Assembly: GCA_002269645.1 (NCBI GenBank) | Contig: NIVC01000732.1 | Span: forward strand, 394,214 to 458,213 | Reading direction: 5' to 3' | From: Macrostomum lignano | Taxonomy: Eukaryota | Length of the DNA: 64,000 bases | Part shown: piece after piece, positions 4,558-17,696 of the stretch | Layout of the letters: every line of letters starts with the position of its first letter | How positions within the stretch are numbered: position 1 is the first letter of the stretch | Notes under the pieces: generated by a model | Database searches by the model: none | The model's input: only the letters and a program-made list of their open reading frames with translations | Told to the model about the DNA's origin: nothing | Made by a program: the position numbers and the translations under genes

Positions 4558-4764
4558 TCAACGCAACCGACGCGCCTCCCGCTCAGACTCTAACAGAGTG
4601 AGAATATCGCCCTCGCGTACTGGGCCCTTCACGTTGCGAATAATCGATCGACTGCTCTCGTCGAGAAATTCAACGCGAACCTGGGTGCACTGGCCTTGGG
4701 ATCCGGTTCGGCCAACTACCTTGGTGACGCGGGCAAGACGGGGCTGTCCGGTTTTTGAGTCCAT
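4558..4764 (-). CDS. RPS28: 40S ribosomal protein S28 (eS28), 68 aa, intronless CDS
   Basis: Translation ...[59 protein letters not shown] is the canonical eS28 sequence. Acceptor tttcag ends 11 nt before the ATG. AATAAA on the minus strand at 4452-4457. Confidence 0.98.
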
Positions 4765-6390: not shown

Positions 6391-7595
6391 TTAAGCCTTC
6401 AGCGCTTGTTTCTTCTGTTGCAGCTTAGCTTTCTTATTCTTGTTCTTATTCTTCTTTTTGTTATTAGTAGTAGCCGGCTGTGACTGCTGCTTAGGGGCGG
6501 CAGGAGCGGCAGGCTGATTAGATGGTTTCTTTGGCAGAGACGGCTGCTGCTCCGGCTTCTGTTTTACGCCAGCAACGTCGCCATTGGCATCGGCGGCCAA
6601 TTTTCGCTGTTTCCTCTCGGCGGCCAGCTGATTCTTATAGCTGGCCGATCGGCCAAACGCTACGCGCAGCTTGCAGCCTCGCACAGCGGCACCCTGGGCG
6701 GATTTCAAAGCTTTCAAAGCGTCGGCAGGCTGTGCGTATTCAGCGAACGCGTAGCCAACCGTTGACTTGTCGCGCAGGGTTGGCACTTTAACACTAGTCG
6801 CGTTCGGGAACAGAGCGGCCAACTCCTCTTTAGTGGCGTCTTTGGCAACATTAGTAATAAATAGTTGGCGCGTATTCAAAGTGGCCACATCAACGCTGCC
6901 AGTTTGTGCCATTTTGGCTACCAATTCAGACCCGTTGAACATTTTGCCATTGAGCATATTCACCCATTTGGCGGCCGTGGTCGAGTCTTTGTATTGAAGG
7001 AAAGCGTAGCTCCGATTTTCCGATTTATTCTTCGGATTGCAAGGAATTCGAGAGGATACAATCTCTTTAGATAGCTCTTTTAGCATAGCCTGGGTGCAGC
7101 CCTTCGGAATCGGGGTGATGAACACAGTGCAGTTAAGCGACTCAGTCATTAGACGCTTGATTTCTTCTACAATATCCGGCGGTCCCGGGTCCGACTCGGC
7201 GACGACAGAAGTGGCTGGTTGCTTTTTCTGCTTGCTGGCGGCTTGAGTAGAAGCTTCTTCGGCTGGACGCTTCTGGCCGCGCTGCTGTTCTTGCTGTTGT
7301 TGCTTTTGCTGCTGCTTGGCAGAAGCGTCAGTCTTTGCTAGCTTAGCAGGTGGCGCAGCCTCTTCTTCTTCATCGTCTTCTTCTTCTTCTTCATCATCGT
7401 CATCATTATCTTCTTCGCTGTCGCTCTCAGCTGGACGCTTCATGCGCGACAAAGCTAGCGGCTCCAGCTTCTGTTGACCTTTCTTCTGGACCGGGAGGGC
7501 AGCTGGCTCTTCTTCGTCGTCGTCTTCATCATCTTCCTCATCGTCCGAGGAGCCTGCGTCGGCCAGCAGCTTGGCAATGGATTCTTCGTTGACAT
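6391..7595 (-). CDS. NCL: Nucleolin-like protein, 3' part of last exon (acidic tract, two RRMs, basic tail)
   Basis: Open frame DVNEESIAKLL...LSRMKRPAES...stop at 6391. RRM1 has RNP2 VFITPI and RNP1 RSYAFLQY. RRM2 (LFITNV...LFPNATSVKVP...VGYAFAEY) resembles vertebrate nucleolin RRM3. AATAAA on the minus strand at 6177-6182. Confidence 0.85.
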
Positions 7596-7608
7596 CCTCG
7601 TCTAGTTC

Positions 7609-10600
7609 TTCTTCTTCTTCTTCAGTCCTTTTCTCGCCTCGCGGCGTGGACGCTCTGCCGCCGACTCACTGGCAGGTCTTTCGATGTCTGGCCATGTTCG
7701 TGCGGGCCAGCATCCTCCCGCAGTCCGGGCACGGAGCTCTGGCGCTCTTGTAGATCCGCGCCGTAATCCCCGTCGTCTGCTGGCCTCTCCCCGTTGGTAC
7801 TGCTGCTTCTTCTGCCCTCTCGTCCGGTGTCGCGCCCGCCTCTGGTTTCCTTCCGTTCTCCTTGCACCGTTTCCTATGCCGCGCGTGGTTGGACTTGCTT
7901 ATCCACTTGTTGCACTCTCCGCAGTGGACTTCTTTCGCCGATCGCTCCTCTCCTCCGCACCTCTTCTGGTGGTTTTTTCTTGTCGCCTCCGTGAAGAAGG
8001 TAGCGTTGCACTTTAGGCACGGCAGCGGTGTCTTCGTAAATTGATGGTGTATCCTCCGTTGGTGTACGGCTAACCCGGCTCTCGACGCGCACACCTTCCC
8101 GCAGTTCTCGTAATTGCACCTGTACCCGGTCAGCTCCGATTCCACTTCTCCGGCTTCTCTTTCCTGTGCTGTTTCTTCCTCAGTCGTCTCTGCTTTCTTT
8201 CCTTTCTTCCTCTCGCTCTCCTCCAGCGCTCTTTCCCTGATGCGTAACTTCTTTCTCCAAGCCTCTCTATCGGTCACCAGCCTTTCGACCTCCAGCTCAT
8301 CGATTTCTGCCGTGCGCAGTAGCTTTCTCCATACCGAGATGATGGTCTGCCTTCTCTTCCGCGCTTTCTTGATGGTAGTCAGCTTCTTGCTCCAGCCGAG
8401 GACACATCTTTTGACGGTGCTGGTATCCGGGAGTCTGAGTACGTGGCCTAGCCTGCGCCAGTGGGCCGATTCGACTTTGGCGCCGATGCTTCGGACCCGC
8501 AGTTCGTTCCGCACGTCCCACATGTTCACTTTTTTTCTCTCCATTTCTTTTAGCGGTGGTTCGGTCTTGCTGCTCCACACGTACCGATAACGACGGTCCA
8601 TTGCCTGCTGCATCCGCTTAATTTCCGACTTGTGGAAGGGCCGGGCGCCTGCATTGAAGAGCATCGTGCTCTCAACACAGGTCTCTATGATCCTAGCTTG
8701 GGTGCGTTTGCTTAGTCGTGTTTTGCGTAGCATGCATTTGACTCCCGCCCACGCTTTGGCAGCTCTCTGCAGCCGCTGGGCGGTGTCCTGCTTTCTGCCG
8801 ATCCAGGTGCCCAGTATCCGGATGTTCTGACTCTCAGGTGTTCCTAGCTTAGCTCGCTCTTCCTTCTCATCGTTCGTCCGTTCTTCTAGGATTCCGATGG
8901 TCTCGATGACGGTTCTCGTCCCTTGCTCGATTTCCTCGGATCCCCCGACAATAGTGGTGTCGTCAGCGAACAGTACTTCTGTGATTGTTATCTCCGCCGC
9001 TTCTTCGTTGTAACCTCCCATCTTTTTAGGCGGTAAGCATTTGCCCGGTCGGCAAACCCACTTGATTCCGCATTCGGCCCCGGTGTTCTTCGCTTTTTCC
9101 ATGCGCCTCTCTTTTGCTATCCGTATCGCCGTCTGGTGATAGATGTTGAAGAGGATAGGCGATGTGGCGCAGCCTTCTCTCAGCCCGCGTTGTGGGTAAA
9201 ATTCGGAACTTGTCTCTGCGCCGCACCGTACCGTGTACGCGGTGTACTCGTGCAGGTCTGCCAGCTTTTTTATCGTGCGCTCCGGCATGTGCTGATGTTT
9301 CAGCAGTTCCCAAAGAGCCGGCTTGTTTACCCGCGGGTAGGCCTTCTTAAGGTCTAGCAAGACTAGGCTGGTATCCATCGACTCTGCCCATTCTGGGCTC
9401 TCTCTGATCTTCTCGGCGTCCTCGTTCAGTCTGAGTATGATCTGGGTCGCATCCATAGTGGACCGGCCGCTCCGGAAACCGAACTGGTTGTCGTCTAGCA
9501 GACCCATGTTCTCCGTCCATGAGCTCAGCCTCGTCGCCAGTATCCGAGCGAGTATCCTGCTTGCGACTGGTAGGAGGCAGATCCCTCTGAAATTATTGAG
9601 GTTCGTCCGATCGCCTTTCTTGTGGAGTGGCATGATTACACCTACTTTCTGGTCCTCCTCCCAGGTGTCCGCTGGGTTGTTCCAGATGTAGTGCACTACT
9701 TTCCGGACCTCCGCTTGGGCCATTGCGCACGCGCTGGTGATGTAGCGCATTCGGATGCCGTCTAAGCCCGGGGCCCCGTCTTTGATCTTTTTGATTTCGT
9801 CGTCGATCTCTTTGTTTGTTAGTGGTCTGGACAGCCGGTCATTGGCTTCCTCTATCGTAGCCTTGTCTACGCTTGGCTTTGGGGCTGACCTAATTAGATT
9901 GAGCATTTCCTCCTGGTCGTTCTCGAACCGTTGCTCCTGGATCTTTGACAGGTGTTCCTTGAAGTCTTCCGCCGTGAACAGTGGTACTGTTCTGCTGTTG
10001 TTCTCATTTTGCTTTGTGTTCCTGCCCATCTTCCGCAAACAGTCGTACATCCCAGCCACGTTTCCCGTGTCGCAGTTCCGCTTGCACTCTTCGGCAATCT
10101 CCATCCACCACTGTTCCATCCACTCTTGGAGTTTCTTCTTCTGCTTTCCCCGCTTCTCTTTCAGCCCTTGTGTGGCTCGGGTCAAGGCCACCGTCCGCTC
10201 TTCTACTGTTAGGGTCCCTTCGGGTGACTTCTTAACTCGGTTGCGGGCGCTCAGGGCGTGCTCCACTTCTTTGTTAAGTTCTGCCAGCTCTTCTTCGTGC
10301 CCTACCATCCACGGGTTCGTCTGTCTCGTCTTTGGGCCGCAGATTTCTCTCGCGGCTTCAAGCATCGTTTGTTTCGTCGTTTCCCAGTCGGTCTCGCCCT
10401 TTCCAGCTAGCACTTCCTCCGTCTTATTTCTGTATAGTTCGCGTACGCCGACATCGCGGAGCCGGTCCCAGGCGATTTCGTTTTTTTGGTTTTTTGGATA
10501 CTTCCTGGTTGGTTCCGCGCATCTCTCCGCGAATCTTCTCTTCATGGTGATGACCTTCGGTAGGTGGTCGGACCTCGTATGGTGATTCGGATCGTGGTCG

Positions 10601-11781
10601 GTCCTGATGCTCCCGATGATCCGGTGTCTCTGCTCTTTCTTGGTGATGAAGCCGTCAATCTCGTACCATTGGTGTGACCTCGGGTTCCGCCAGGTGCCTT
10701 GCTTCTTCTGCCTGTAGAAGGTGCTCGCCCATGCCAGGCCTAGGCTTTCTAGCCAAAGAAGTAGGTCTTCACCCTGTTGGTTCGTTGGTCCGATTCCATA
10801 ACGGCCTGTGCTCGAGAGACGGTGCACTCCGCTCCCAACGCTGGCGTTGAAATCTCCACCGATGATTAGTACAGCCTTCTTTGCAAAGGTGTTCAGCATC
10901 CTTTCGATTTCTTCTCGGATCTCATCCACTTCTTCCTCGTACTCTTTACCCTTCTTGACCGGTTGGTATACGGCTATCAGGATCACTCCGCCTATTTCCA
11001 GCGCAAGTGTTCGTTTCATCGGGTGCATCTTCCTCCCAGTTTCGTTCCACATTGTCCAGGCTGTTTCTCCCAGAAGCATTCCCACCTTCTGGGAGTGGAC
11101 TAGGTGCATCTCTGCTTCTCTGTGATGGTAGCTTCTGATGCCAACGCCAGGTGTGTCAAGTTCGGATAGGAGGGTGACGTCCCATCCCTTTCCTATCGCG
11201 TACTTAACGACCTCGCCGAACCTTCCGCTTCCTACGTTCGCTCTGCGCATATTCCACGTCGCTAGCTTTATGTCGTTATTGTGCCACCTCTCATTTGCCC
11301 TCCTGGCCTTCTCTCTCGCTTTCCTATCTCGTACCTTTTTTCGTCGTGTGGTTCGTCTGAGCTTCCGTGCCGTCTTTTGTGCTGGACGCCTCGGTCCTGG
11401 GTTCTTTTCGATGGTCTCGAGCGCTCTGCTGATTTCAGCCCTTCGCCTTTCCTTGCTTTCTGGGTACGTGCAATTACTCTCTTCCTTGTTCGCTTCATGC
11501 TCCTTCTTTTTTTTGTTTTTTTTGATATTTTCCGCAGCAGTTCCTCACTCTCTCTCTCACTTTCGGCAAAGCTTTCAACCTTACTGTTGTTTCGAGAGGT
11601 GCCTGGGTCGGTTAGGTCCAAGCCACTCTGTTGCGAGGAGGTTTGCCCATAGACCGCGGCTGTTACGCCGAGGCTACGGGCCTCTCTCCCCCCCCCGATT
11701 CTGCTTTGCCAACCGGGTTGCTCCGGTTGCCCGCTTGGCACCGCGTGTTGACGGCACGCTTCGTGGAGGTGCAGAATCTTG
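7609..11781 (-). mobile_element. Apparently full-length RTE-clade non-LTR retrotransposon (~4173 bp) inserted in a coding exon
   Basis: 13-bp TSD cctcgtctagttc at 7596-7608 and 11782-11794. (GAA)5-6 tail at 7606-7623. Very short 3'UTR (~57 nt). One long APE-RT ORF. Confidence 0.95.
7666..11250 (-). CDS. RTE retrotransposon protein: AP endonuclease + reverse transcriptase + C-terminal C2H2/C2HC zinc fingers
   Basis: APE motifs IKLATWNMR (extends upstream of the ATG), GGDFNA, TWRNPRSHQWYEIDGF and RSDH. RT motifs QFGFRSGRST, LDLKKAY, GLREGCATSPILFN and LFADD. Four Cx2-4C...Hx3-4(H/C) motifs. The frame stays open upstream to 11544. Confidence 0.95.
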   Translation of the reverse strand: MRRANVGSGRFGEVVKYAIGKGWDVTLLSELDTPGVGIRSYHHREAEMHLVHSQKVGMLLGETAWTMWNETGRKMHPMKRTLALEIGGVILIAVYQPVKKGKEYEEEVDEIREEIERMLNTFAKKAVLIIGGDFNASVGSGVHRLSSTGRYGIGPTNQQGEDLLLWLESLGLAWASTFYRQKKQGTWRNPRSHQWYEIDGFITKKEQRHRIIGSIRTDHDPNHHTRSDHLPKVITMKRRFAERCAEPTRKYPKNQKNEIAWDRLRDVGVRELYRNKTEEVLAGKGETDWETTKQTMLEAAREICGPKTRQTNPWMVGHEEELAELNKEVEHALSARNRVKKSPEGTLTVEERTVALTRATQGLKEKRGKQKKKLQEWMEQWWMEIAEECKRNCDTGNVAGMYDCLRKMGRNTKQNENNSRTVPLFTAEDFKEHLSKIQEQRFENDQEEMLNLIRSAPKPSVDKATIEEANDRLSRPLTNKEIDDEIKKIKDGAPGLDGIRMRYITSACAMAQAEVRKVVHYIWNNPADTWEEDQKVGVIMPLHKKGDRTNLNNFRGICLLPVASRILARILATRLSSWTENMGLLDDNQFGFRSGRSTMDATQIILRLNEDAEKIRESPEWAESMDTSLVLLDLKKAYPRVNKPALWELLKHQHMPERTIKKLADLHEYTAYTVRCGAETSSEFYPQRGLREGCATSPILFNIYHQTAIRIAKERRMEKAKNTGAECGIKWVCRPGKCLPPKKMGGYNEEAAEITITEVLFADDTTIVGGSEEIEQGTRTVIETIGILEERTNDEKEERAKLGTPESQNIRILGTWIGRKQDTAQRLQRAAKAWAGVKCMLRKTRLSKRTQARIIETCVESTMLFNAGARPFHKSEIKRMQQAMDRRYRYVWSSKTEPPLKEMERKKVNMWDVRNELRVRSIGAKVESAHWRRLGHVLRLPDTSTVKRCVLGWSKKLTTIKKARKRRQTIISVWRKLLRTAEIDELEVERLVTDREAWRKKLRIRERALEESERKKGKKAETTEEETAQEREAGEVESELTGYRCNYENCGKVCASRAGLAVHQRRIHHQFTKTPLPCLKCNATFFTEATRKNHQKRCGGEERSAKEVHCGECNKWISKSNHARHRKRCKENGRKPEAGATPDERAEEAAVPTGRGQQTTGITARIYKSARAPCPDCGRMLARTNMARHRKTCQ

Positions 11782-14700
11782 CCTCGTCTAGTTCGTCGTC
11801 ATCTAGATCCTCTTCGTCTTCGTCGTCTTCTTCCTCCTCGTCGTCGTCGTCTTCATCATCATCGTCGTCCAAATCGTCGTCTTCGTCGCTGTCCTCTTCC
11901 AGCTTGCGCTTGGCCTGCAAGCGAGAAAAAATATTAGCACTTTTTTTAAAAATGGGATGAAAACAACCAGAAATGCATCGAAAAATTGTAAGAGCGGAAC
12001 TCACCGGCAGTTTGACAAGCTGTCCAGCAGGTGATTTATTACTGCCAGCTGTTCCTGCGGCTGCAGCGGTGGCGGGCGACTTAGCAGCGGTAGCAACGGC
12101 GGTAGCTGGCGACTTAGCTGAAGCGGCAATAGCCGGTTTCTTTGAAGGCGGCGGAGCTTCTTCGTCATCGTCATCGTCGTCTTCTTCATCATCCTCATCG
12201 TCTTCGTCGGAGCCGGCAGCGGCTAGCATCTTCTCGATCTTGTCCATGTCCATCTCCTCTTCATCGTCATCATCGTCGTCTTCCTCTTCGTCCTCATCCA
12301 AATCTTCGTCGTCATCATCATCGTCTTCCTGTTCGACCTTCTTCGCAGCCGGTTTCGCCGCGGCGGCTGGCTGGAATAAAATAGGGATTAAACTACTGAG
12401 ATTGTGAGATGGGGAATAAGCTACTGACATTGTGAGATGGGGAATAAGCTATTGACACTGTGAGATGGGGAATAAGCTACTGACATTGTGAGATGGGGAA
12501 TAAGCTTCTGACACTGTGAGATGGGGAATAAGCTACTGACACTGTGAGATGGTGATTAAGCTACTGACACTGTGAGATGGGGAATAAGCTACTGACACTG
12601 TGAGATGGGGAATAAGCTACTGACACTGTGAGATGGGGAATAAGCTACTGACATTGTGAGATGGGGAATAAGCTACTGACACTGTGAGATGGGGAATAAG
12701 CTACTGACATTGTGAGATGGGGAATAAGCTATTGACACTGTGAGATGGGGAATAAGCTACTGACATTGTGAGATGGGGATTAAGCTACTGACACTGTGAG
12801 ATGGGGAATAAGCTACTGACATTGTGAGATGGGGAATAAGCTACTGACATTGTGAGATGGTGATTAAGCTACTGACACTGTGAGATGGGGAATAAGCTAC
12901 TGACACTGTGAGATGGGGAATAAGCTACTGACACTGTGAGATGGGGAATAAGCTACTGACACTGTGAGATGGGGAATAAGCTACTGACATTGTGAGATGG
13001 GGATTAAGCTACTGACACTGTGAGATGGGGAATAAGCTATTGACACTGTGAGATGGGGAATAAGCTACTGACATTGTGAGATGGGGATTAAGCTACTGAC
13101 ACTGTGAGATGGGGAATAAGCTACTGACATTGTGAGATGGGGAATAAGCTACTGACACTGTGAGATGGGGAATAAGCTACTGACACTGTGAGATGGGGAA
13201 TAAGCTACTGACACTGTGAGATGGGGAATAAGCTACTGACATTGTGAGATGAGGATTAAGCTACTGACACTGTGAGATGGGGAATAAGCTATTGACACTG
13301 TGAGATGGGGAATAAGCTACTGACATTGTGAGATGGGGATTAAGCTACTGACACTGTGAGATGGGGAATAAGCTACTGACATTGTGAGATGGGGAATAAG
13401 CTACTGACACTCATACATGCGCAACCTCCAAATTTCGGTCGGCCGTGCGACTTAGTTTTAACAAAAATGCGACGTAGTTTTTGGCCAAAAATGCGACTTA
13501 GATGTAAAAAAACCCAAAAGGAAAATTAACGCAACTTTGGGTAAACGGCAGGAGTAACTATGACTGTCTTATAAAGCCAAAATGCCTCGTCAGCTACTTA
13601 GTACTACTACTCGGTGTTTTTCGGGTCAGCATTTTTGCGACTTCCTTGGTTGGCCGCCAAATCGGTCGGCCGAATCGGCCGACTCGGCCGACTGTTGCGC
13701 ATGTATGCTGACACTGTGAGATGGGGAATAAGCTACTGACACTGTGAGATGGGGAATAAGCTACTGACACTGTGAGATGGGGAATAAGCTACTGACATTG
13801 TGAGATGGGGATTAAGCTACTGACACTGTGAGATGGGGAATAAGCTATTGACACTGTGAGATGGGGAATAAGCTACTGACATTGTGAGATGGGGATTAAG
13901 CTACTGACACTGTGAGATGGGGAATAAGCTACTGACATTGTGAGATGGGGAATAAGCTACTGACATTGTGAGATGGTGATTAAGCTACTGACACTGTGAG
14001 ATGGGGAATAAGCTACTGACACTGTGAGATGGGGAATAAGCTACTGACACTGTGAGATGGGGAATAAGCTACTGACATTGTGAGATGGGGATTAAGCTAC
14101 TGACACTGTGAGATGGGGAATAAGCTATTGACACTGTGAGATGGGGAATAAGCTACTGACATTGTGAGATGGGGAATAAGCTACTGACACTGTGAGATGG
14201 GGAATAAGCTACTGACATTGTGAGATGGGGAATAAGCTACTGACACTGTGAGATGGGGAATAAGCTTCTGACACTGAGATGGGAAATAAGCTACTGACAT
14301 TGTGAGATGGGGAATAAGCTACTGACACTGTGAGATGGGGAATAAGCTACTGACATTGTGAGATAGGGAATAAGCTTCTGACACTGAGATGGGAAATAAG
14401 CTACTGACATTGTGAGATGGGGAATAAGCTACTGACACTGTGAGATGGGGAATAAGCTACAGACACTGTGAGATGGGGAATAAGCTACTGACACTGTGAG
14501 ATGGGGAATAAGCTACTGACATTGTGAGATGGGGAATAAGCTTCTGACACTGTGAGATGGGGAATAAGCTACTGACATTGTGAGATGGGGAATAAGCTAC
14601 TGACAAAGACTAGATGACGTGGACAAAACCTTAAATACTGCCAATGTACGCAAATGTCGAGTCAACGAGACAAAATCTACTAAGCGCTAAAAGAAAGGCA

Positions 14701-17696
14701 AAGTTGAAACTCTCGTTCTAGTTTAAAGACACGACGAACTGCGTTGATAGACGATACTTTGCGCCGCTACGAAAACCGACGCGTTAACTGATTTTTTAAC
14801 TGAACGGACGGTGAGCAATGAGCGGCATTTGGTTTAGTTTCTTTTAACAGACTCAATAGGATTCTTAGGGGCTGTAGCCACGTGTTCTAGCGCGGCGCTC
14901 TGATGTGCAAGAGGCCCAGGCTTGATTCCAAGCGCAGTCACATTAATTTGGGGCTAAATTAGATTATCGTAAGGCACAGTGGTGTACATGCCGAACAATA
15001 AATAAAGTTAGGGGAGTTGTGTACACTCCTGTGTGAGTGTGTGCCTGTGCATTTGACTGTGTTCGTATTCGCGCGCTTATGCGCCTACTCAGGGGAGTCG
15101 GCGAAATGGGCAGTAGTGCCTCTCGCCGGTTGTATGACAATGTCGCTTAAAGTGCACACAGCCCCCTGCCTCTAATAATAAAAACGGGCTCGTAAAACTA
15201 CTTTTAGTAATCTATTATACTAAAAATGAAAATCTTATTCACTAAAAATAAAGTAGGACGAGATGCAAAATGAAAAACTGAATTAAAAAGACCCAGATTG
15301 AACTACTTACTAAGTAACAAGCAGAGCTGATATTAGACAATGAACTAAAACACTTACAGATTTTCCTGCCGGAGATTTGGCAGCCGAAGCAGGAGCAGTC
15401 TGCTTCTGCTGTTTCTGCAGCTGCTTGAGCTTGCCCATCAGTTCCGGACTCAAATCGTCATCATCCTCGTCTTCGTCATCGTCATCTTCGTCTCCGCCTT
15501 CTTCATCGTCGCCGCTGCTGAACTCCAATTCGCTGTCGTCTTCTCCTTCCATGCCTTCTTCGTCCTCGTCCTCGTCTTCCTCGTCATCATCGTCATCGCC
15601 ACCAGACGATGGCTTTTTCTGTTGCGGCCTGTTGCCACCCTGTTAGGTGATTAAATAAAGCAGGTGATATTTGAACATTTTCTGTCGTGTAGAAACAGCA
15701 GACATTGCAGATTCGAAATCTATCTACGACAGGGGTTGGCAAACTCAGGCCCGCTGGCTACTCCCTCTGGCCCCTCTGGCCATTCAGAGTTGTGAATGGT
15801 CCCTCTGGCCATTCAGAGTTGTGAATGGTCCCTCTGGCCATTTACAGTTGTGAATGGTCCCTCTGGCCATTTAGTTGTGAATGGCCCCTCTGGCCATTCA
15901 GAGTTGTGAATGGTCCCTCTGGCCATTCAGAGTTGTGAATGGTCCCTCTGGCCATTTACAGTTGTGAATGGTCCCTCTGGCCATTTAGTTGTGAATGGTC
16001 CCTCTGGCCATTCAGAGTTGTGAATGGTCCCTCTGGCCATTCAGAGTTGTGAATGGTCCCTCTGGCCATTCAGAGTTGTGAATGGTCCCTCTGGCCATTT
16101 ACAGTTGTGAATGGTCCCTCTGGCCATTTAGTTGTGAATGGTCCCTCTGGCCATTCAGAGTTGTGAATGGTCCCTCTGGCCATTCAGAGTTGTGAATGGT
16201 CCCTCTGGCCATTCAAGAGTTGTGAATGGTCCTTCTGGCCATTCAGAGTTGTGAATTGTTCCTCTGGCCATTCAGAGTTGTGAATTGTTCCTCTGGCCAT
16301 TCAGAGTTGTGAATGGTCCCTCTGGCCATTTAGTTGTGAATGGTCCCTCTGGCCATCTGGCCATTCAGAGTTGTGAATGGTCCCTCTGGCCATTTAGTTG
16401 TGAATGGTCCCTCTGGCCATTCAGAGTTGTGAATGGTCCCTCTGGCCATTCAGAGTTGTGAATGGTCCCTCTGGCCATTTAGAGTTGTGAATGGTCCCTC
16501 TGGCCATTTAGTTGTGAATGGTCCCTCTGGCCATTCAGAGTTGTGAATGGTCCCTCTGGCCATTCAGAGTTGTGAATGGTCCCTCTGGCCATTTAGAGTT
16601 GTGAATGGTCCCTCTGGCCATTCAGAGTTGTGAATGGTCCCTCTGGCCATCCCTATCTCTACTGCCCGCAGTCATGCACTAGATTCTCTATCTAATTGAG
16701 GTAAAAAAAAATTGCCAACCCCTGATCCAAGAGAACATAAGGGAAGATCTTGACATTTATTGAAAAAAACGGACAGAGTTAAGATTTAACGTCTAGTGAA
16801 CCTAGACTAAGAATGATCCTATATTCACTTGCGTCGCCCTAAAATTGCTGCCTGTAACACAGGGAAAAATAGGAGAGAAGTGACTCTAAACCGACTTTAA
16901 ACAGACGAGATATCACGATAAAAGTCGCCTAAAACTCAATTTGAGGCACTTTATTGTCTGCGACTCTGTGGCCGTATAGTCGGTCTCTGGGGCGTGCTGG
17001 AGTTGCTGTAAAGTTACTCAGCCCACCTGCGTCATCTTGTAGAACTTAGAATCGCATTTAGCATTTATAAAAACTATAATAAGTTAGTAGACAGTTAAGC
17101 ACCAACACAACGACTCTTGGATGACTCTTCTACGATTCTATAACTCACGTGATTACGTGAAAGTCACAAGAGTCGCTATAGTCACTAATTGGTTGTTTGC
17201 AATAATTCTTTTACCGATTCAAAATTGATCCAACAATAATATCTTATTTGTAGTTGTAGAACATTATTAATTGTTCATATAATTATCTGCGCACCTGAAA
17301 TCCACCACCGCGCTTAAAAGCACTGGCGCTGCCACGATTGCCGTTGAAGCCGCCGCCTCTTCTAGCAACCTGCTGCTTGCCGTCGCCAGCTTTAACGCCT
17401 TTGAACGGCTGAATCTGGGCGAATGGCTTTTTGTCGCCGGGCGTGGCCGGACTGCGGGATTGATCCTTTTGAAAGTAGCGACCGCCGCCACCGCCGCCGC
17501 CGCGGTTGCCGGGGCTGCCTCGACCGCCGCGGTTGCCGGGGCTGCCACGACCGCCGCGATTGCCAGGGCTGCCACGACCGCCGCGGTGTCCCGGGCTGGA
17601 ACTGAATCGGCCGCCGCCGCCGCCGCCACCTCGGTTTCCGCCCCTGCCACCGCCCCCTCTGTTTCCGCCTCTGCCTCTATTGAAATTGCCTCGCAT
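11782..17696 (-). CDS. NCL: Nucleolin-like protein, 5' exons: 17696-17295, 15639-15358, 12370-12005, 11914-11782 (continues at 7595-6391 after the insertion)
   Basis: All junctions are phase-0 GT-AG: CAG|GTGCGC, taacag|GGT, TCT|GTAAGT, ttccag|CCA, CCG|GTGAGT, ttgcag|GCC. Exon 1 is RGG-rich (RGGRGSPGN x3). The following exons are D/E tracts alternating with KSPA-type basic spacers. Joined ORF without the insertion is 2388 nt (795 aa). Confidence 0.8.
12384..14604. repeat. 28-bp minisatellite (tgtgagatggggaataagctactgacac) in a nucleolin intron
   Basis: Clear 28-nt period, about 65-70 units, interrupted at 13412-13707. Confidence 0.97.
13412..13707. mobile_element. hAT-type MITE (296 bp) inserted into the 28-bp array
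   Basis: Perfect 14-bp TIRs CATACATGCGCAAC (13412-13425) and GTTGCGCATGTATG (13694-13707). Perfect 8-bp TSD ctgacact (13404-13411, 13708-13715). Confidence 0.9.
14868..15184 (+). mobile_element. tRNA-derived SINE, copy A
   Basis: Head ggggctgtagccacgtgttctag (A-box-like) and ggcttgattcc (B-box-like, 14919-14929). Body is shared with the inverted copy at 27835-28191. Tail taataataaaaa. Confidence 0.7.
15730..16724. mobile_element. hAT (Charlie-like) non-autonomous element whose interior is a 29-bp tandem array
   Basis: TIRs CAGGGGTTGGCAA (15730) and TTGCCAACCCCTG (16712-16724). 8-bp flanks atctacga / atccaaga match at 6/8. Confidence 0.8.
15770..16652. repeat. 29-bp minisatellite (cattcagagttgtgaatggtccctctggc) with an internal hairpin
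   Basis: About 30 units. ccattca and tgaatgg are complementary within each unit. Confidence 0.95.

What the first reader, a model, noticed from the sequence alone, without database searches (positions are those of the whole stretch)
6391..11914. Intact RTE retrotransposon inserted inside the last coding exon of the nucleolin-like gene
Seen: the 13-mer cctcgtctagttc occurs at both 11782-11794 and 7596-7608. Deleting the 4.17-kb element plus one TSD copy joins ...GAC GAA CTA GAC GAG|GAT GTC AAC GAA GAA... (DELDE-DVNEE) into an unbroken frame running through both RRMs. With the element present, translation stops at 11663, before the RRMs. The host halves are stop-free and the element ORF is intact, so the insertion is probably very recent or polymorphic. 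Inference: loss of a nucleolin-type ribosome-biogenesis gene would need a second allele or homeolog, or removal of the element from the mRNA.
Basis: partly seen in the sequence, partly recalled or inferred. Interest (0 to 1): 0.85.

Follow-up and report, generated by a model that had tools for sequence, protein, structure and literature searches.

The report
Young LINE insertion splitting a flatworm gene
A 4.2-kb retrotransposon has recently inserted into the last coding exon of one copy of a nucleolin-like gene in a Macrostomum flatworm. A second, uninterrupted copy of the gene exists, and the element is not a typical RTE: it has the same layout as L1Tc of Trypanosoma cruzi.

Summary
A 4,173-bp non-LTR retrotransposon (7609-11781, minus strand) is flanked by a perfect 13-bp target-site duplication. 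Removing it restores one reading frame through both RRMs. With the element present, the host frame stops at 11663.

A colinear copy of the locus in the public Macrostomum lignano assembly (L003) carries exactly the predicted empty site. This rules out an assembly chimera and two separate genes, and shows that an uninterrupted copy exists.

The interpretation needs two corrections.
- **Not a typical RTE.** The element has the remnant of a 5' HDV-like ribozyme, a 2A-like NPGP motif, APE, RT, four C-terminal zinc fingers, a 42-nt 3' UTR and a (GAA)5 tail. This matches the L1Tc/Ingi layout, except that it lacks RNase H and a poly(A) tail.
- **"Intact" is only partly true.**
  - The 1,292-codon frame is open and its catalytic residues are conserved.
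  - The copy lacks the P1 5' strand of the ribozyme.
  - Ribozyme loop L3 carries an 18-nt insertion.
  - No ATG lies upstream of the 2A motif or of the APE catalytic Asn.

Relatives of the element sit next to sense-strand GAN-triplet runs. One of them also splits an acidic coding tract. The acidic exon may therefore be a preferred target rather than an accident.

The parts
7609..11781 (-). Inserted non-LTR retrotransposon, 4,173 bp, in the same orientation as the host gene.
   Evidence: It lies between identical 13-bp TSDs. It is single-copy in the window. It is absent from the colinear locus L003.
11782..11794 (-). Upstream (5') copy of the target-site duplication, GAACTAGACGAGG in gene sense.
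   Evidence: The terminal GG could also be microhomology with the element's missing ...GCTTGG 5' end.
7596..7608 (-). Downstream (3') copy of the target-site duplication. It begins with GAA, in register with the (GAA)n tail.
11697..11781 (-). Remnant of a 5'-terminal HDV-like ribozyme. Present: P2 GAUUCUGC/GCAGAAUC, P3 ACC/GGU, P1 3' strand GCCAAGC, the GG of P1.1, P4 AACCGG/CCGGUU and J4/2 GGCAAA. Missing: the P1 5' strand. L3 carries an 18-nt insertion.
   Evidence: The relaxed descriptor hits only here in 64 kb on both strands, and 0 times per 128 kb in 30 shuffles. The full fold is found in relatives, with covariation. Rfam gives no hit on the window copy.
11545..11696 (-). 5' leader. It is similar to the leaders of relatives at nucleotide and peptide level (..ATEWLGPNRPRHLSKQQ*). 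It has five in-frame stops, and a TTG where relatives L002/L010 have ATG.
   Evidence: plus sequence comparison.
7666..11544 (-). Long open frame of 1,292 codons plus the TGA stop. The first ATG (11250) lies after the APE catalytic Asn.
   Evidence: It aligns end to end with four 1,270-1,359-aa relatives at 38-39% identity.
11392..11424 (-). 2A-like motif ALETIEKNPGP.
   Evidence: NPGP is invariant, and L-x-[TD]-[IV]-[EH]-x-NPGP is conserved in all relatives.
10555..11268 (-). APE-type endonuclease domain. TWN, SELD, GGDFN and SDH are all conserved.
   Evidence: Pfam PF14529. Invariant columns N98, E128, D231, N233, D326 and H327.
8806..9624 (-). Reverse transcriptase domain with an FADD box.
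   Evidence: Pfam RVT_1, E=1.8e-21. Invariant F859-A860-D861-D862.
7669..8118 (-). Four C-terminal C2H2/C2HC-type zinc-finger motifs.
   Evidence: The Cys and His columns are invariant in the alignment. Pfam zf-C2H2 scores 21.9 bits, below the 25.2 cut-off. Relatives carry precomputed PF00096.
7609..7665 (-). 42-nt 3' UTR (7624-7665) followed by a (GAA)5 tail (7609-7623).
   Evidence: Relatives have 30-45-nt UTRs ending in (GAA)4, (TAGTG)4, (GATAC)4 or (GAAGT)3.
6391..7595 (-). Distal part of the host's last coding exon: acidic tracts, two RRMs, a Lys-rich tail and the stop codon.
   Evidence: RRM_1 x2, E=9e-22. It is 98% identical to M. lignano BOX15_Mlig031596g1.
11795..11914 (-). Proximal part of the same exon, an acidic tract. 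The splice acceptor is at 11915-11916.
   Evidence: The intron 11915-12004 has GT..AG ends.
11663..11665 (-). Premature stop for the host reading frame inside the element.
   Evidence: ORF 11663..12430.

Best explanation
**Shown**
- One copy of a nucleolin-like gene (acidic tracts plus 2 RRMs) in a Macrostomum genome was hit by target-primed reverse transcription of a single-ORF LINE.
- The element entered in sense orientation at GAC|GAACTAGACGAGG|ATG within a run of GAN (Asp/Glu) codons and made a 13-bp TSD.
- The element's layout is: 5' HDV-like ribozyme, leader, 2A-like NPGP, APE endonuclease, reverse transcriptase, four zinc fingers, short 3' UTR, (GAA)n.
- The insertion truncates the host protein 38 codons into the element, before the RRMs.
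- A second gene copy (L003) has the empty site.

**Inferred**
- The bottom strand was nicked so that the (GAA)n RNA tail could pair with the 3'-CTT end of the primer.
- In relatives, the ribozyme probably frees the element RNA from host co-transcripts, and the 2A motif trims the N-terminus.
- This copy lost about 6 nt at its 5' end, which is the P1 5' strand. It probably cannot cut itself out of the host transcript and is likely a dead end.
- The second gene copy makes the loss tolerable.
- The insertion is younger than the split between the two gene copies.
For: - **Insertion event:** TSD and frame restoration.
- **Empty site:** exact match in colinear L003 at 92-94% nucleotide identity.
- **Domains:** APE and RT. 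Full-length alignment to four relatives with catalytic residues invariant and 2A and Zn-finger columns conserved.
- **Ribozyme in relatives:** the full HDV-like fold lies at the 5' end in L002, L006, L008, L010 and L011, with different but complementary P1 and P2 helices. Of the paired cells, 95.6% form standard pairs, 8 pairs show double changes, and 0/500 shuffles reach this.
- **Independent Rfam support:** the best Rfam hit across the relatives is an HDV ribozyme model at the same coordinates, L006:120-197 (E=0.16, below the family threshold).
- **5' end definition:** two independent L002/L010 insertions begin exactly at the first nucleotide of P1.
- **Window copy:** it matches every part of the fold except the P1 5' strand. 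This match is unique in the window and absent from shuffles.
- **Truncation pattern:** the window copy starts at the same point as L004/L007, one nucleotide upstream of L005.
- **Age:** the open frame implies under 1.7% neutral divergence. dS against L003 is 0.02-0.05.
[quoted passage not shown] L1Tc has ribozyme, 2A, APE, RT, RNase H and C2H2 (PMC5814959).
Against: - No reads or transcripts were available, so zygosity, expression and ribozyme or 2A activity are untested.
- No second copy of this exact element was found. The best protein identity was 55% or less. I therefore cannot tell which oddities were inherited from the source copy and which arose at or after insertion: the missing P1 strand, the 18-nt L3 insertion and the absent ATG.
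- Relative L011 also lacks an ATG before its 2A motif, so the missing ATG may be normal for the family.
- Rfam finds nothing on the window copy.
- L003 could be a homeolog, a paralog, a divergent haplotype or the ortholog in a sibling species. The window's source assembly was not identified.
Confidence: 0.85

Rival explanations
1. Assembly chimera: the element was spliced into the exon by misassembly of repeats.
For: No read-level data could be checked. The flanks are low-complexity GAN repeats.
Against: The hallmarks of target-primed insertion are all present and precise: a perfect 13-bp TSD, the element's microsatellite tail abutting the TSD, and a 5' junction at the point where other family members are truncated. 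The element is single-copy in the window, so there is no repeat for an assembler to collapse. The empty-site copy matches to the base.
Confidence: 0.03
2. The insertion is old and fixed, and this gene copy is an established pseudogene.
For: The leader has five in-frame stops. The ribozyme is incomplete. There is no ATG before the 2A motif.
Against: There are no stops in 1,292 codons, compared with five in the 79 leader codons. Uniform decay would not produce this contrast, so the leader stops were probably already in the source copy. The TSDs are identical. Both host halves are open, with dN/dS of 0.3-0.4 against L003. The element is absent from a copy only 2-5% diverged at synonymous sites.
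Confidence: 0.08
3. The copy is fully functional. In this lineage, translation starts at a non-AUG codon or by ribozyme/IRES-like initiation, and P1 is not needed or forms with other sequence.
For: Relative L011 also has no ATG before its 2A motif. All catalytic residues are conserved. In relatives the frame is open from the element's 5' end.
Against: The expected P1 5' strand GCUUGGC is absent. The host sequence at that position offers only a 3-bp stack (4 of 7 positions pair) with GCCAAGC. Full-length relatives keep a 6-7-bp P1. No HDV-like ribozyme I know of (from memory) carries an 18-nt insertion in L3.
Confidence: 0.12
4. The element is a canonical RTE-clade member.
For: It has a single long APE+RT ORF, a very short 3' UTR and a short tandem-repeat tail. 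HDV-like ribozymes are reported in RTEs (PMC6765202; PMC3774820).
Against: It has four C-terminal zinc fingers and an N-terminal 2A-like motif. The 2A survey found 2A only in Rex1, Crack, L2, L2A, CR1 and Ingi (PMC3708506). More distant relatives include RNase H-bearing and C2H2-bearing elements. At 4.17 kb it is longer than the roughly 3.3 kb I recall for classical RTE (from memory).
Confidence: 0.2

Closest known systems
L1Tc / Ingi clade of Trypanosoma (and metazoan Ingi and Vingi elements)
   Same: The order of parts is the same: HDV-like ribozyme in the first ~80 nt, N-terminal 2A-like NPGP, APE, RT, C-terminal C2H2-type fingers, a single ORF, and a TSD of about a dozen bp (PMC5814959; PMC3708506).
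   Different: There is no RNase H domain: Pfam gives no hit, and only about 230 aa separate RT from the fingers. The tail is (GAA)n rather than poly(A). There are four finger motifs rather than two. Phylogenetic membership was not tested.
RTE clade (RTE-1, BovB)
   Same: APE+RT in one ORF, a very short 3' UTR and a short tandem-repeat tail. Some RTEs have 5' HDV-like ribozymes and depend on host co-transcription (PMC6765202).
   Different: C-terminal zinc fingers and a 2A motif are present here. The element is about 0.9 kb longer than classical RTE (from memory).
R2 elements with a 5' HDV-like ribozyme
   Same: Co-transcription with a host gene, self-cleavage at or near the 5' junction, and imprecise 5' junctions (PMC3774820). 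As I recall, R2 ORFs also lack a clear AUG; I did not check this in a paper.
   Different: R2 uses a restriction-like endonuclease and one specific 28S rDNA site. This element has an APE endonuclease and dispersed GAN-rich targets.
Exonic LINE insertions that truncate genes (for example disease-causing L1 insertions)
   Same: Sense-orientation insertion in a coding exon, with a TSD and a premature stop.
   Different: The host genome here carries a second, uninterrupted gene copy, so the loss is probably buffered.

Membership tests
RTE clade non-LTR retrotransposon | Single long ORF with an N-terminal APE endonuclease followed by RT | tested here: met
   Pfam PF14529 and PF00078 in one 1,292-codon frame.
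RTE clade non-LTR retrotransposon | ORF ends after the RT/thumb region, with no C-terminal Cys/His nucleic-acid-binding domain (from memory of Malik & Eickbush 1998) | tested here: not met
   Four C2H2/C2HC motifs with invariant Cys and His occupy the last ~150 aa.
RTE clade non-LTR retrotransposon | Very short 3' UTR ending in short tandem repeats | tested here: met
   42-nt UTR plus (GAA)5. Relatives are similar.
RTE clade non-LTR retrotransposon | RT domain groups with RTE references in a phylogeny | not testable with these tools
   No clade-labelled reference sequences were available. The Repbase/RTclass1 papers and supplements are not held.
Ingi / L1Tc (and Vingi) group | HDV-like ribozyme at the extreme 5' end | tested here: inconclusive
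   The full fold with covariation is present in five relatives. The window copy has every part except the P1 5' strand, plus an 18-nt L3 insertion. Cleavage was not assayed.
Ingi / L1Tc (and Vingi) group | 2A-like NPGP sequence just upstream of APE | tested here: met
   ALETIEKNPGP lies about 45 aa before the TWN motif and is conserved in all relatives. Activity was not assayed.
Ingi / L1Tc (and Vingi) group | RNase H domain after RT (Ingi/L1Tc; from memory, reported absent in Vingi) | tested here: not met
   No RNase_H hit. A more distant relative, P0032, does have one.
Ingi / L1Tc (and Vingi) group | C-terminal C2H2 zinc fingers | tested here: met
   L1Tc description in PMC5814959.
Ingi / L1Tc (and Vingi) group | Poly(A) 3' tail | tested here: not met
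   The tail is (GAA)5.
Ingi / L1Tc (and Vingi) group | RT domain groups with Ingi/Vingi references | not testable with these tools
   No reference set was available.
HDV-like self-cleaving ribozyme | Nested double pseudoknot: P1, P1.1, P2, P3 and P4 in the canonical order | tested here: inconclusive
   Met in relatives with a sub-threshold Rfam RF02682 hit. In the window copy P1 cannot form.
HDV-like self-cleaving ribozyme | Catalytic C in J4/2 and two L3 Cs pairing with GG (P1.1) | tested here: met
   Window: GGCAAA before the P2 3' strand, UCC in L3, and GG after the P1 3' strand. The P1.1 pairs are invariant in relatives.
HDV-like self-cleaving ribozyme | Self-cleavage 5' of P1 leaving a 5'-OH | not testable with these tools
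   This needs an in vitro transcription and cleavage assay.
Nucleolin family | N-terminal acidic stretches | tested here: met
   Several D/E runs occur in exons 12005-12370 and 11795-11914 and in the distal part of the last exon.
Nucleolin family | Four RRMs followed by a C-terminal Gly/Arg-rich domain (from memory) | tested here: not met
   Only two RRM_1 domains and a Lys-rich C-terminus. The best PDB match is nucleolin, E=1.6e-19. It is nucleolin-like only in a loose sense.

The most novel reading that the evidence does not exclude
This LINE family (5' HDV-like ribozyme, 2A, APE-RT, zinc fingers) integrates preferentially, and in a fixed orientation, into GAN-triplet runs. Those runs include the Asp/Glu-coding acidic tracts of protein-coding exons. 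The element would then land in sense inside transcribed genes, be co-transcribed from the host promoter, cut itself free with the ribozyme and trim its N-terminus with 2A. Acidic-tract genes such as nucleolin-like genes would be recurrent victims.
Probability: 0.3. Interest if true: 0.65.

Novelty: new member of a known kind. Interest (0 to 1): 0.42.

Why it matters
- **For the genome.** This is a clean, datable example of a retrotransposon knocking out one copy of a ribosome-biogenesis-type gene in a flatworm genus. From memory, that genus is known for recent genome duplication. A second copy shows the empty site, so the locus could serve as a marker for copy-specific or haplotype-specific analysis.
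- **For mobile-element biology.**
  - The element belongs to a little-described family. Its closest relatives come from metagenome assemblies (one from a marine sample), and others from the acoel Convolutriloba.
  - The family combines two recoding and processing devices, an HDV-like ribozyme and a 2A peptide. As far as I know, these were previously documented together mainly in trypanosome L1Tc.
  - The flanks suggest an orientation-specific preference for GAN repeats. If that holds, acidic coding tracts would be hot spots for this family.

Tried and rejected
- **Rfam on the window's element 5' end:** no ribozyme hit, only chance snoRNA matches in the GAN tract.
- **Plain MFE folding of the 5' end:** z = -2, uninformative for a pseudoknot.
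- **Upstream frame-1 ORF (11268-11741):** no Pfam hit.
- **Programmed -1 frameshift at A AAA AAA sites (element nt ~255-280) or homopolymer (G9, A8) assembly errors** as a way to join frame 1 to the main frame. I set these aside for two reasons. Frame 1 has no ATG upstream of the slippery sites. The leader peptide that matches relatives lies in the main frame and is broken by five substitution-type stops, not by indels.
- **Host-element fusion translation:** rejected. The host frame enters the element in a frame that stops after 38 codons.
- **Clade assignment by references:** failed. Kojima 2011, Kapitonov 2009 and the Odon 2013 supplement are not held. Names of database relatives were uninformative.
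- **Identifying the window's source assembly by exact look-up of its RPS28 protein:** not on record.
- **3' UTR stem-loops:** not more stable than shuffles, so not used as evidence.
- **MAFFT alignment including the window ribozyme:** it misaligned because of the 18-nt insertion. Covariation was therefore counted on relatives only.
- **Covariance model of the ribozyme:** not built, because the P4 columns were not in register.
Full report
**1. The observation**

The 13-mer CCTCGTCTAGTTC occurs exactly twice in the window, at 7596-7608 and 11782-11794. Chance expectation is 0.03. The 4,173 bp between the two copies are single-copy in the window.

On the minus strand, the host frame enters the element after ...DDDELDE. 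It reads 38 foreign codons and stops at 11663-11665. Removing 7609-11794 gives one frame...DLDDDELDE|DVNEESIAKLL..., that runs through two RRM_1 domains to the stop at 6391. Every factual statement in the finding checks out.

**2. Independent proof of the empty site, and the host**

The RRM half is 98% identical to a Macrostomum lignano protein, BOX15_Mlig031596g1. That protein's locus is L003, from GCA_002269645.1 contig NIVC01001974.1.
- L003 is colinear with the window's minus strand over about 18 kb, at 92-94% identity around the gene and 85-91% in some outer blocks.
- It reads ...GACGACGAACTAGACGAGGATGTCAACGAAGAA..., which is the predicted empty site to the base, inside a continuous ORF.

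This rules out a chimera and rules out two separate genes. It also shows that an uninterrupted copy exists.

In the last exon the two copies differ by dS of 0.02-0.05 and dN/dS of 0.3-0.4. L003 may be a homeolog, a paralog, a divergent haplotype or a sibling-species ortholog. I could not settle which, because the window's own assembly was not found.

The insertion is in the last coding exon:
- last exon 6391-11914
- GT..AG intron 11915-12004
- upstream exons at 12005-~12370 and ~15349-15640, the latter preceded by a splice acceptor, so the gene continues further upstream

"Nucleolin-like" is fair only loosely. The gene has acidic tracts, and its best PDB match is nucleolin (E=1.6e-19). But it has two RRMs and a Lys-rich tail, not four RRMs and a GAR domain.

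**3. Anatomy of the element (sense strand = minus strand)**

A frame of 1,292 codons (7669-11544) is open. It holds an APE endonuclease and an RT.

It aligns end to end, at 38-39% identity, with four proteins of 1,270-1,359 aa encoded on 4.3-4.7-kb metagenome contigs. The following columns are invariant:
- APE catalytic residues: N98, E128, D231/N233, D326/H327
- the RT FADD box
- the Cys and His of four C-terminal C2H2/C2HC fingers
- an N-terminal ...L-x-T-I-E-x-NPGP motif, which is a 2A-like sequence

The 3' UTR is 42 nt and ends in (GAA)5, directly abutting a TSD that itself starts with GAA. There is no RNase H.

**4. A 5' HDV-like ribozyme in the family**

The 5' ends of the relatives share a motif that threads onto the HDV-ribozyme fold. 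A descriptor requiring P1, J1/2, P2, P3, L3 (UCC...), the P1 3' strand, GG (P1.1), J4/2 (C[AG]AA) and the P2 3' strand finds it at the 5' end of L002, L006, L008, L010 and L011. Their helix sequences differ but stay complementary:

| Loci | P1 | P2 |
|---|---|---|
| L002, L010 | GCUUGG/CCAAGC | UGGUC/GACCA |
| L006 | GCUUGCC/GGCGAGC | GGGUGCG/CGUACCC |
| L008 | GCUUGCC/GGCGAGC | GGGUGC/GCACCC |
| L011 | GCUUUC/GAAAGC | UCUGGUUCG/UGGACCAGA |

On an alignment of five relatives:
- 95.6% of cells pair, against 80% in shuffles and 36-55% when partners are slid
- 8 of 19 pairs show changes on both sides
- 0/500 shuffles reach the observed values

Independently, the best Rfam match in 20.5 kb of relatives is the HDV-ribozyme model RF02682 at exactly L006:120-197. 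It scores 27.5 bits (E=0.16), covers the full model, and is below the family threshold.

Two independent insertions, L002 and L010, begin exactly at the first nucleotide of P1. That is what a self-cleaved RNA template would produce.

Such ribozymes are known at the 5' ends of R2, R4, L1Tc, Baggins and RTE elements. There they release promoter-less elements from host co-transcripts (PMC3774820; PMC6765202).

**5. The window copy is not quite intact**

It carries most of the fold:
- P2: GAUUCUGC/GCAGAAUC, 8 bp
- P3: ACC/GGU
- P1 3' strand: GCCAAGC
- the GG of P1.1
- P4: AACCGG/CCGGUU
- J4/2: GGCAAA

This combination is found nowhere else in the 64 kb and in none of 30 shuffles.

It has three departures from the relatives.
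- **Missing P1 strand.** The copy starts C-AA-P2, so the expected P1 5' strand (GCUUGG) is absent. Copies L004/L007 are truncated at the same point and L005 one nucleotide further in. The host sequence at that position gives only a 3-bp stack (4 of 7 positions pair).
- **L3 insertion.** L3 holds an 18-nt insertion, UCCAC[GAAGCGUGCCGUCAACAC]GC.
- **No upstream ATG.** The first ATG of the long frame follows the catalytic Asn (TWN|M). Upstream, the frame is open for only 50 codons before NPGP and contains no ATG.

The leader that matches relatives (ATEWLGPNRPRHLSKQQ*, compare PTEWRDTSRVKHLLKQ in L004) carries five in-frame stops. It also has TTG where L002/L010 have ATG.

Five stops in 79 leader codons against none in 1,292 ORF codons is not uniform decay. 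The leader state was therefore probably inherited from the source element. L011 also lacks an ATG before its 2A motif, so non-AUG or structure-driven initiation is possible.

My reading, which is an inference, is that the protein-coding body is intact but the copy cannot free itself from the host transcript.

**6. Age**

The TSDs are identical. Under neutral decay, a 3,876-nt frame stays free of stops with P<0.05 once divergence exceeds about 1.7%. The element is absent from a gene copy only 2-5% diverged at synonymous sites. The insertion is therefore young. Whether it is polymorphic cannot be tested here.

**7. What kind of element**

The order of parts is ribozyme, 2A, APE, RT, C2H2 fingers, and then the element ends with TSDs of about a dozen bp.
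- This is the layout of L1Tc/Ingi (PMC5814959).
- 2A sequences were reported in Rex1, Crack, L2, L2A, CR1 and Ingi; RTE is not mentioned in that survey (PMC3708506).
- More distant relatives (25-30% identity) include an RNase H-bearing element and one with C2H2 fingers.
- Against Ingi: no RNase H, and a (GAA)n tail rather than poly(A).
- For RTE: a short UTR and a repeat tail.

No clade-labelled references were available, so phylogenetic membership is open. I put the RTE label at about 0.2.

No protein above about 55% identity exists in the searched collections. The only named relatives are uncharacterized proteins of the acoel Convolutriloba.

**8. A possible reason for the exon hit**

In 8 of 11 loci of the family, the flanks within 90 nt carry in-phase GAN runs of at least 9 nt on the element's sense strand. 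None of the 11 does so on the antisense strand, and 0/2000 shuffles reach this count.

L002 also sits in the D-rich tract of a host gene's last coding exon, in sense orientation. Its frame is restored (...ALDDDD|AHNNGKNYFDTDIP*) when a 4-nt TSD is removed.

This suggests an orientation-specific preference for GAN repeats, of which acidic coding tracts are one instance. The sample is small, and some metagenome contigs share flanks, so this remains a hypothesis.

**9. Verdict**

This is a real and young LINE insertion that truncates one copy of a duplicated nucleolin-like gene. As a gene-disruption event it is ordinary and buffered by the second copy. The element itself is the more interesting part.

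Noticed in passing
window 12384-14605: A 28-bp minisatellite (GGGAATAAGCTACTGACACTGTGAGATG, about 80 copies) fills the intron upstream of exon 12005-12370. It is interrupted by about 300 bp of unique sequence at 13412-13707. The same array is present in L003.
   Followed up: partly
window 15768-16650: A second minisatellite (29-bp unit TGGTCCCTCTGGCCATTCAGAGTTGTGAA, about 30 copies) lies just upstream of exon ~15349-15640.
   Followed up: no
window 17283-17696 (minus): An ORF encoding an RGG/GAR-rich protein (MRGNFNRGRGGNRGGGGRGG...) lies upstream on the same strand as the nucleolin-like gene. It could be a separate nucleolar-type gene or 5' exons of the same gene.
   Followed up: no
L003 ~9930-10210: The uninterrupted M. 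lignano copy carries an in-frame 141-bp tandem duplication (EEPAALLDIFGQHSGQQKLEPLVLSRMKRPAESDSEEDDDDDDEDD twice) that the window copy lacks. The public gene model starts at an internal Met and splices out one repeat, so it annotates only the C-terminal 350 aa.
   Followed up: partly
window 11545-11696 (minus) and the 5' leaders of L004, L002, L011: The leader between ribozyme and 2A is more conserved at nucleotide level than 38% protein identity would predict (for example CAACAGAGTGGC...GGCACCTCTCGAAACAAC against L004 CAACGGAGTGGC...GCACCTCCTAAAACAAA). An apparent compensatory change (GGAG/CUCC to AGAG/CUCU) hints at an RNA structure.
   Followed up: no
L001 159, L002 653, L010 174: In these relatives the first in-frame ATG of the long ORF lies inside the ribozyme, in the P4 3' strand just before J4/2. 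In most relatives the frame is open from the first nucleotides of the element.
   Followed up: partly
L001 4300-4463: The 3' flank of this relative encodes the start of another RT-like protein (..KSPGPDQVTNFWMKQL..), so it is a nested insertion into a different retroelement.
   Followed up: no
window 4558-4764 (minus): A ribosomal protein S28e gene lies downstream of the nucleolin-like gene, in the same order as in L003. There it is followed by an ELAPOR1-like gene.
   Followed up: no
window 11688-11696 and 11502-11527 (minus-strand G9 and A8-C-A8 runs): Long homopolymers sit in the element's leader, where reading frames switch. If the assembly comes from long reads alone, their lengths deserve checking.
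   Followed up: no
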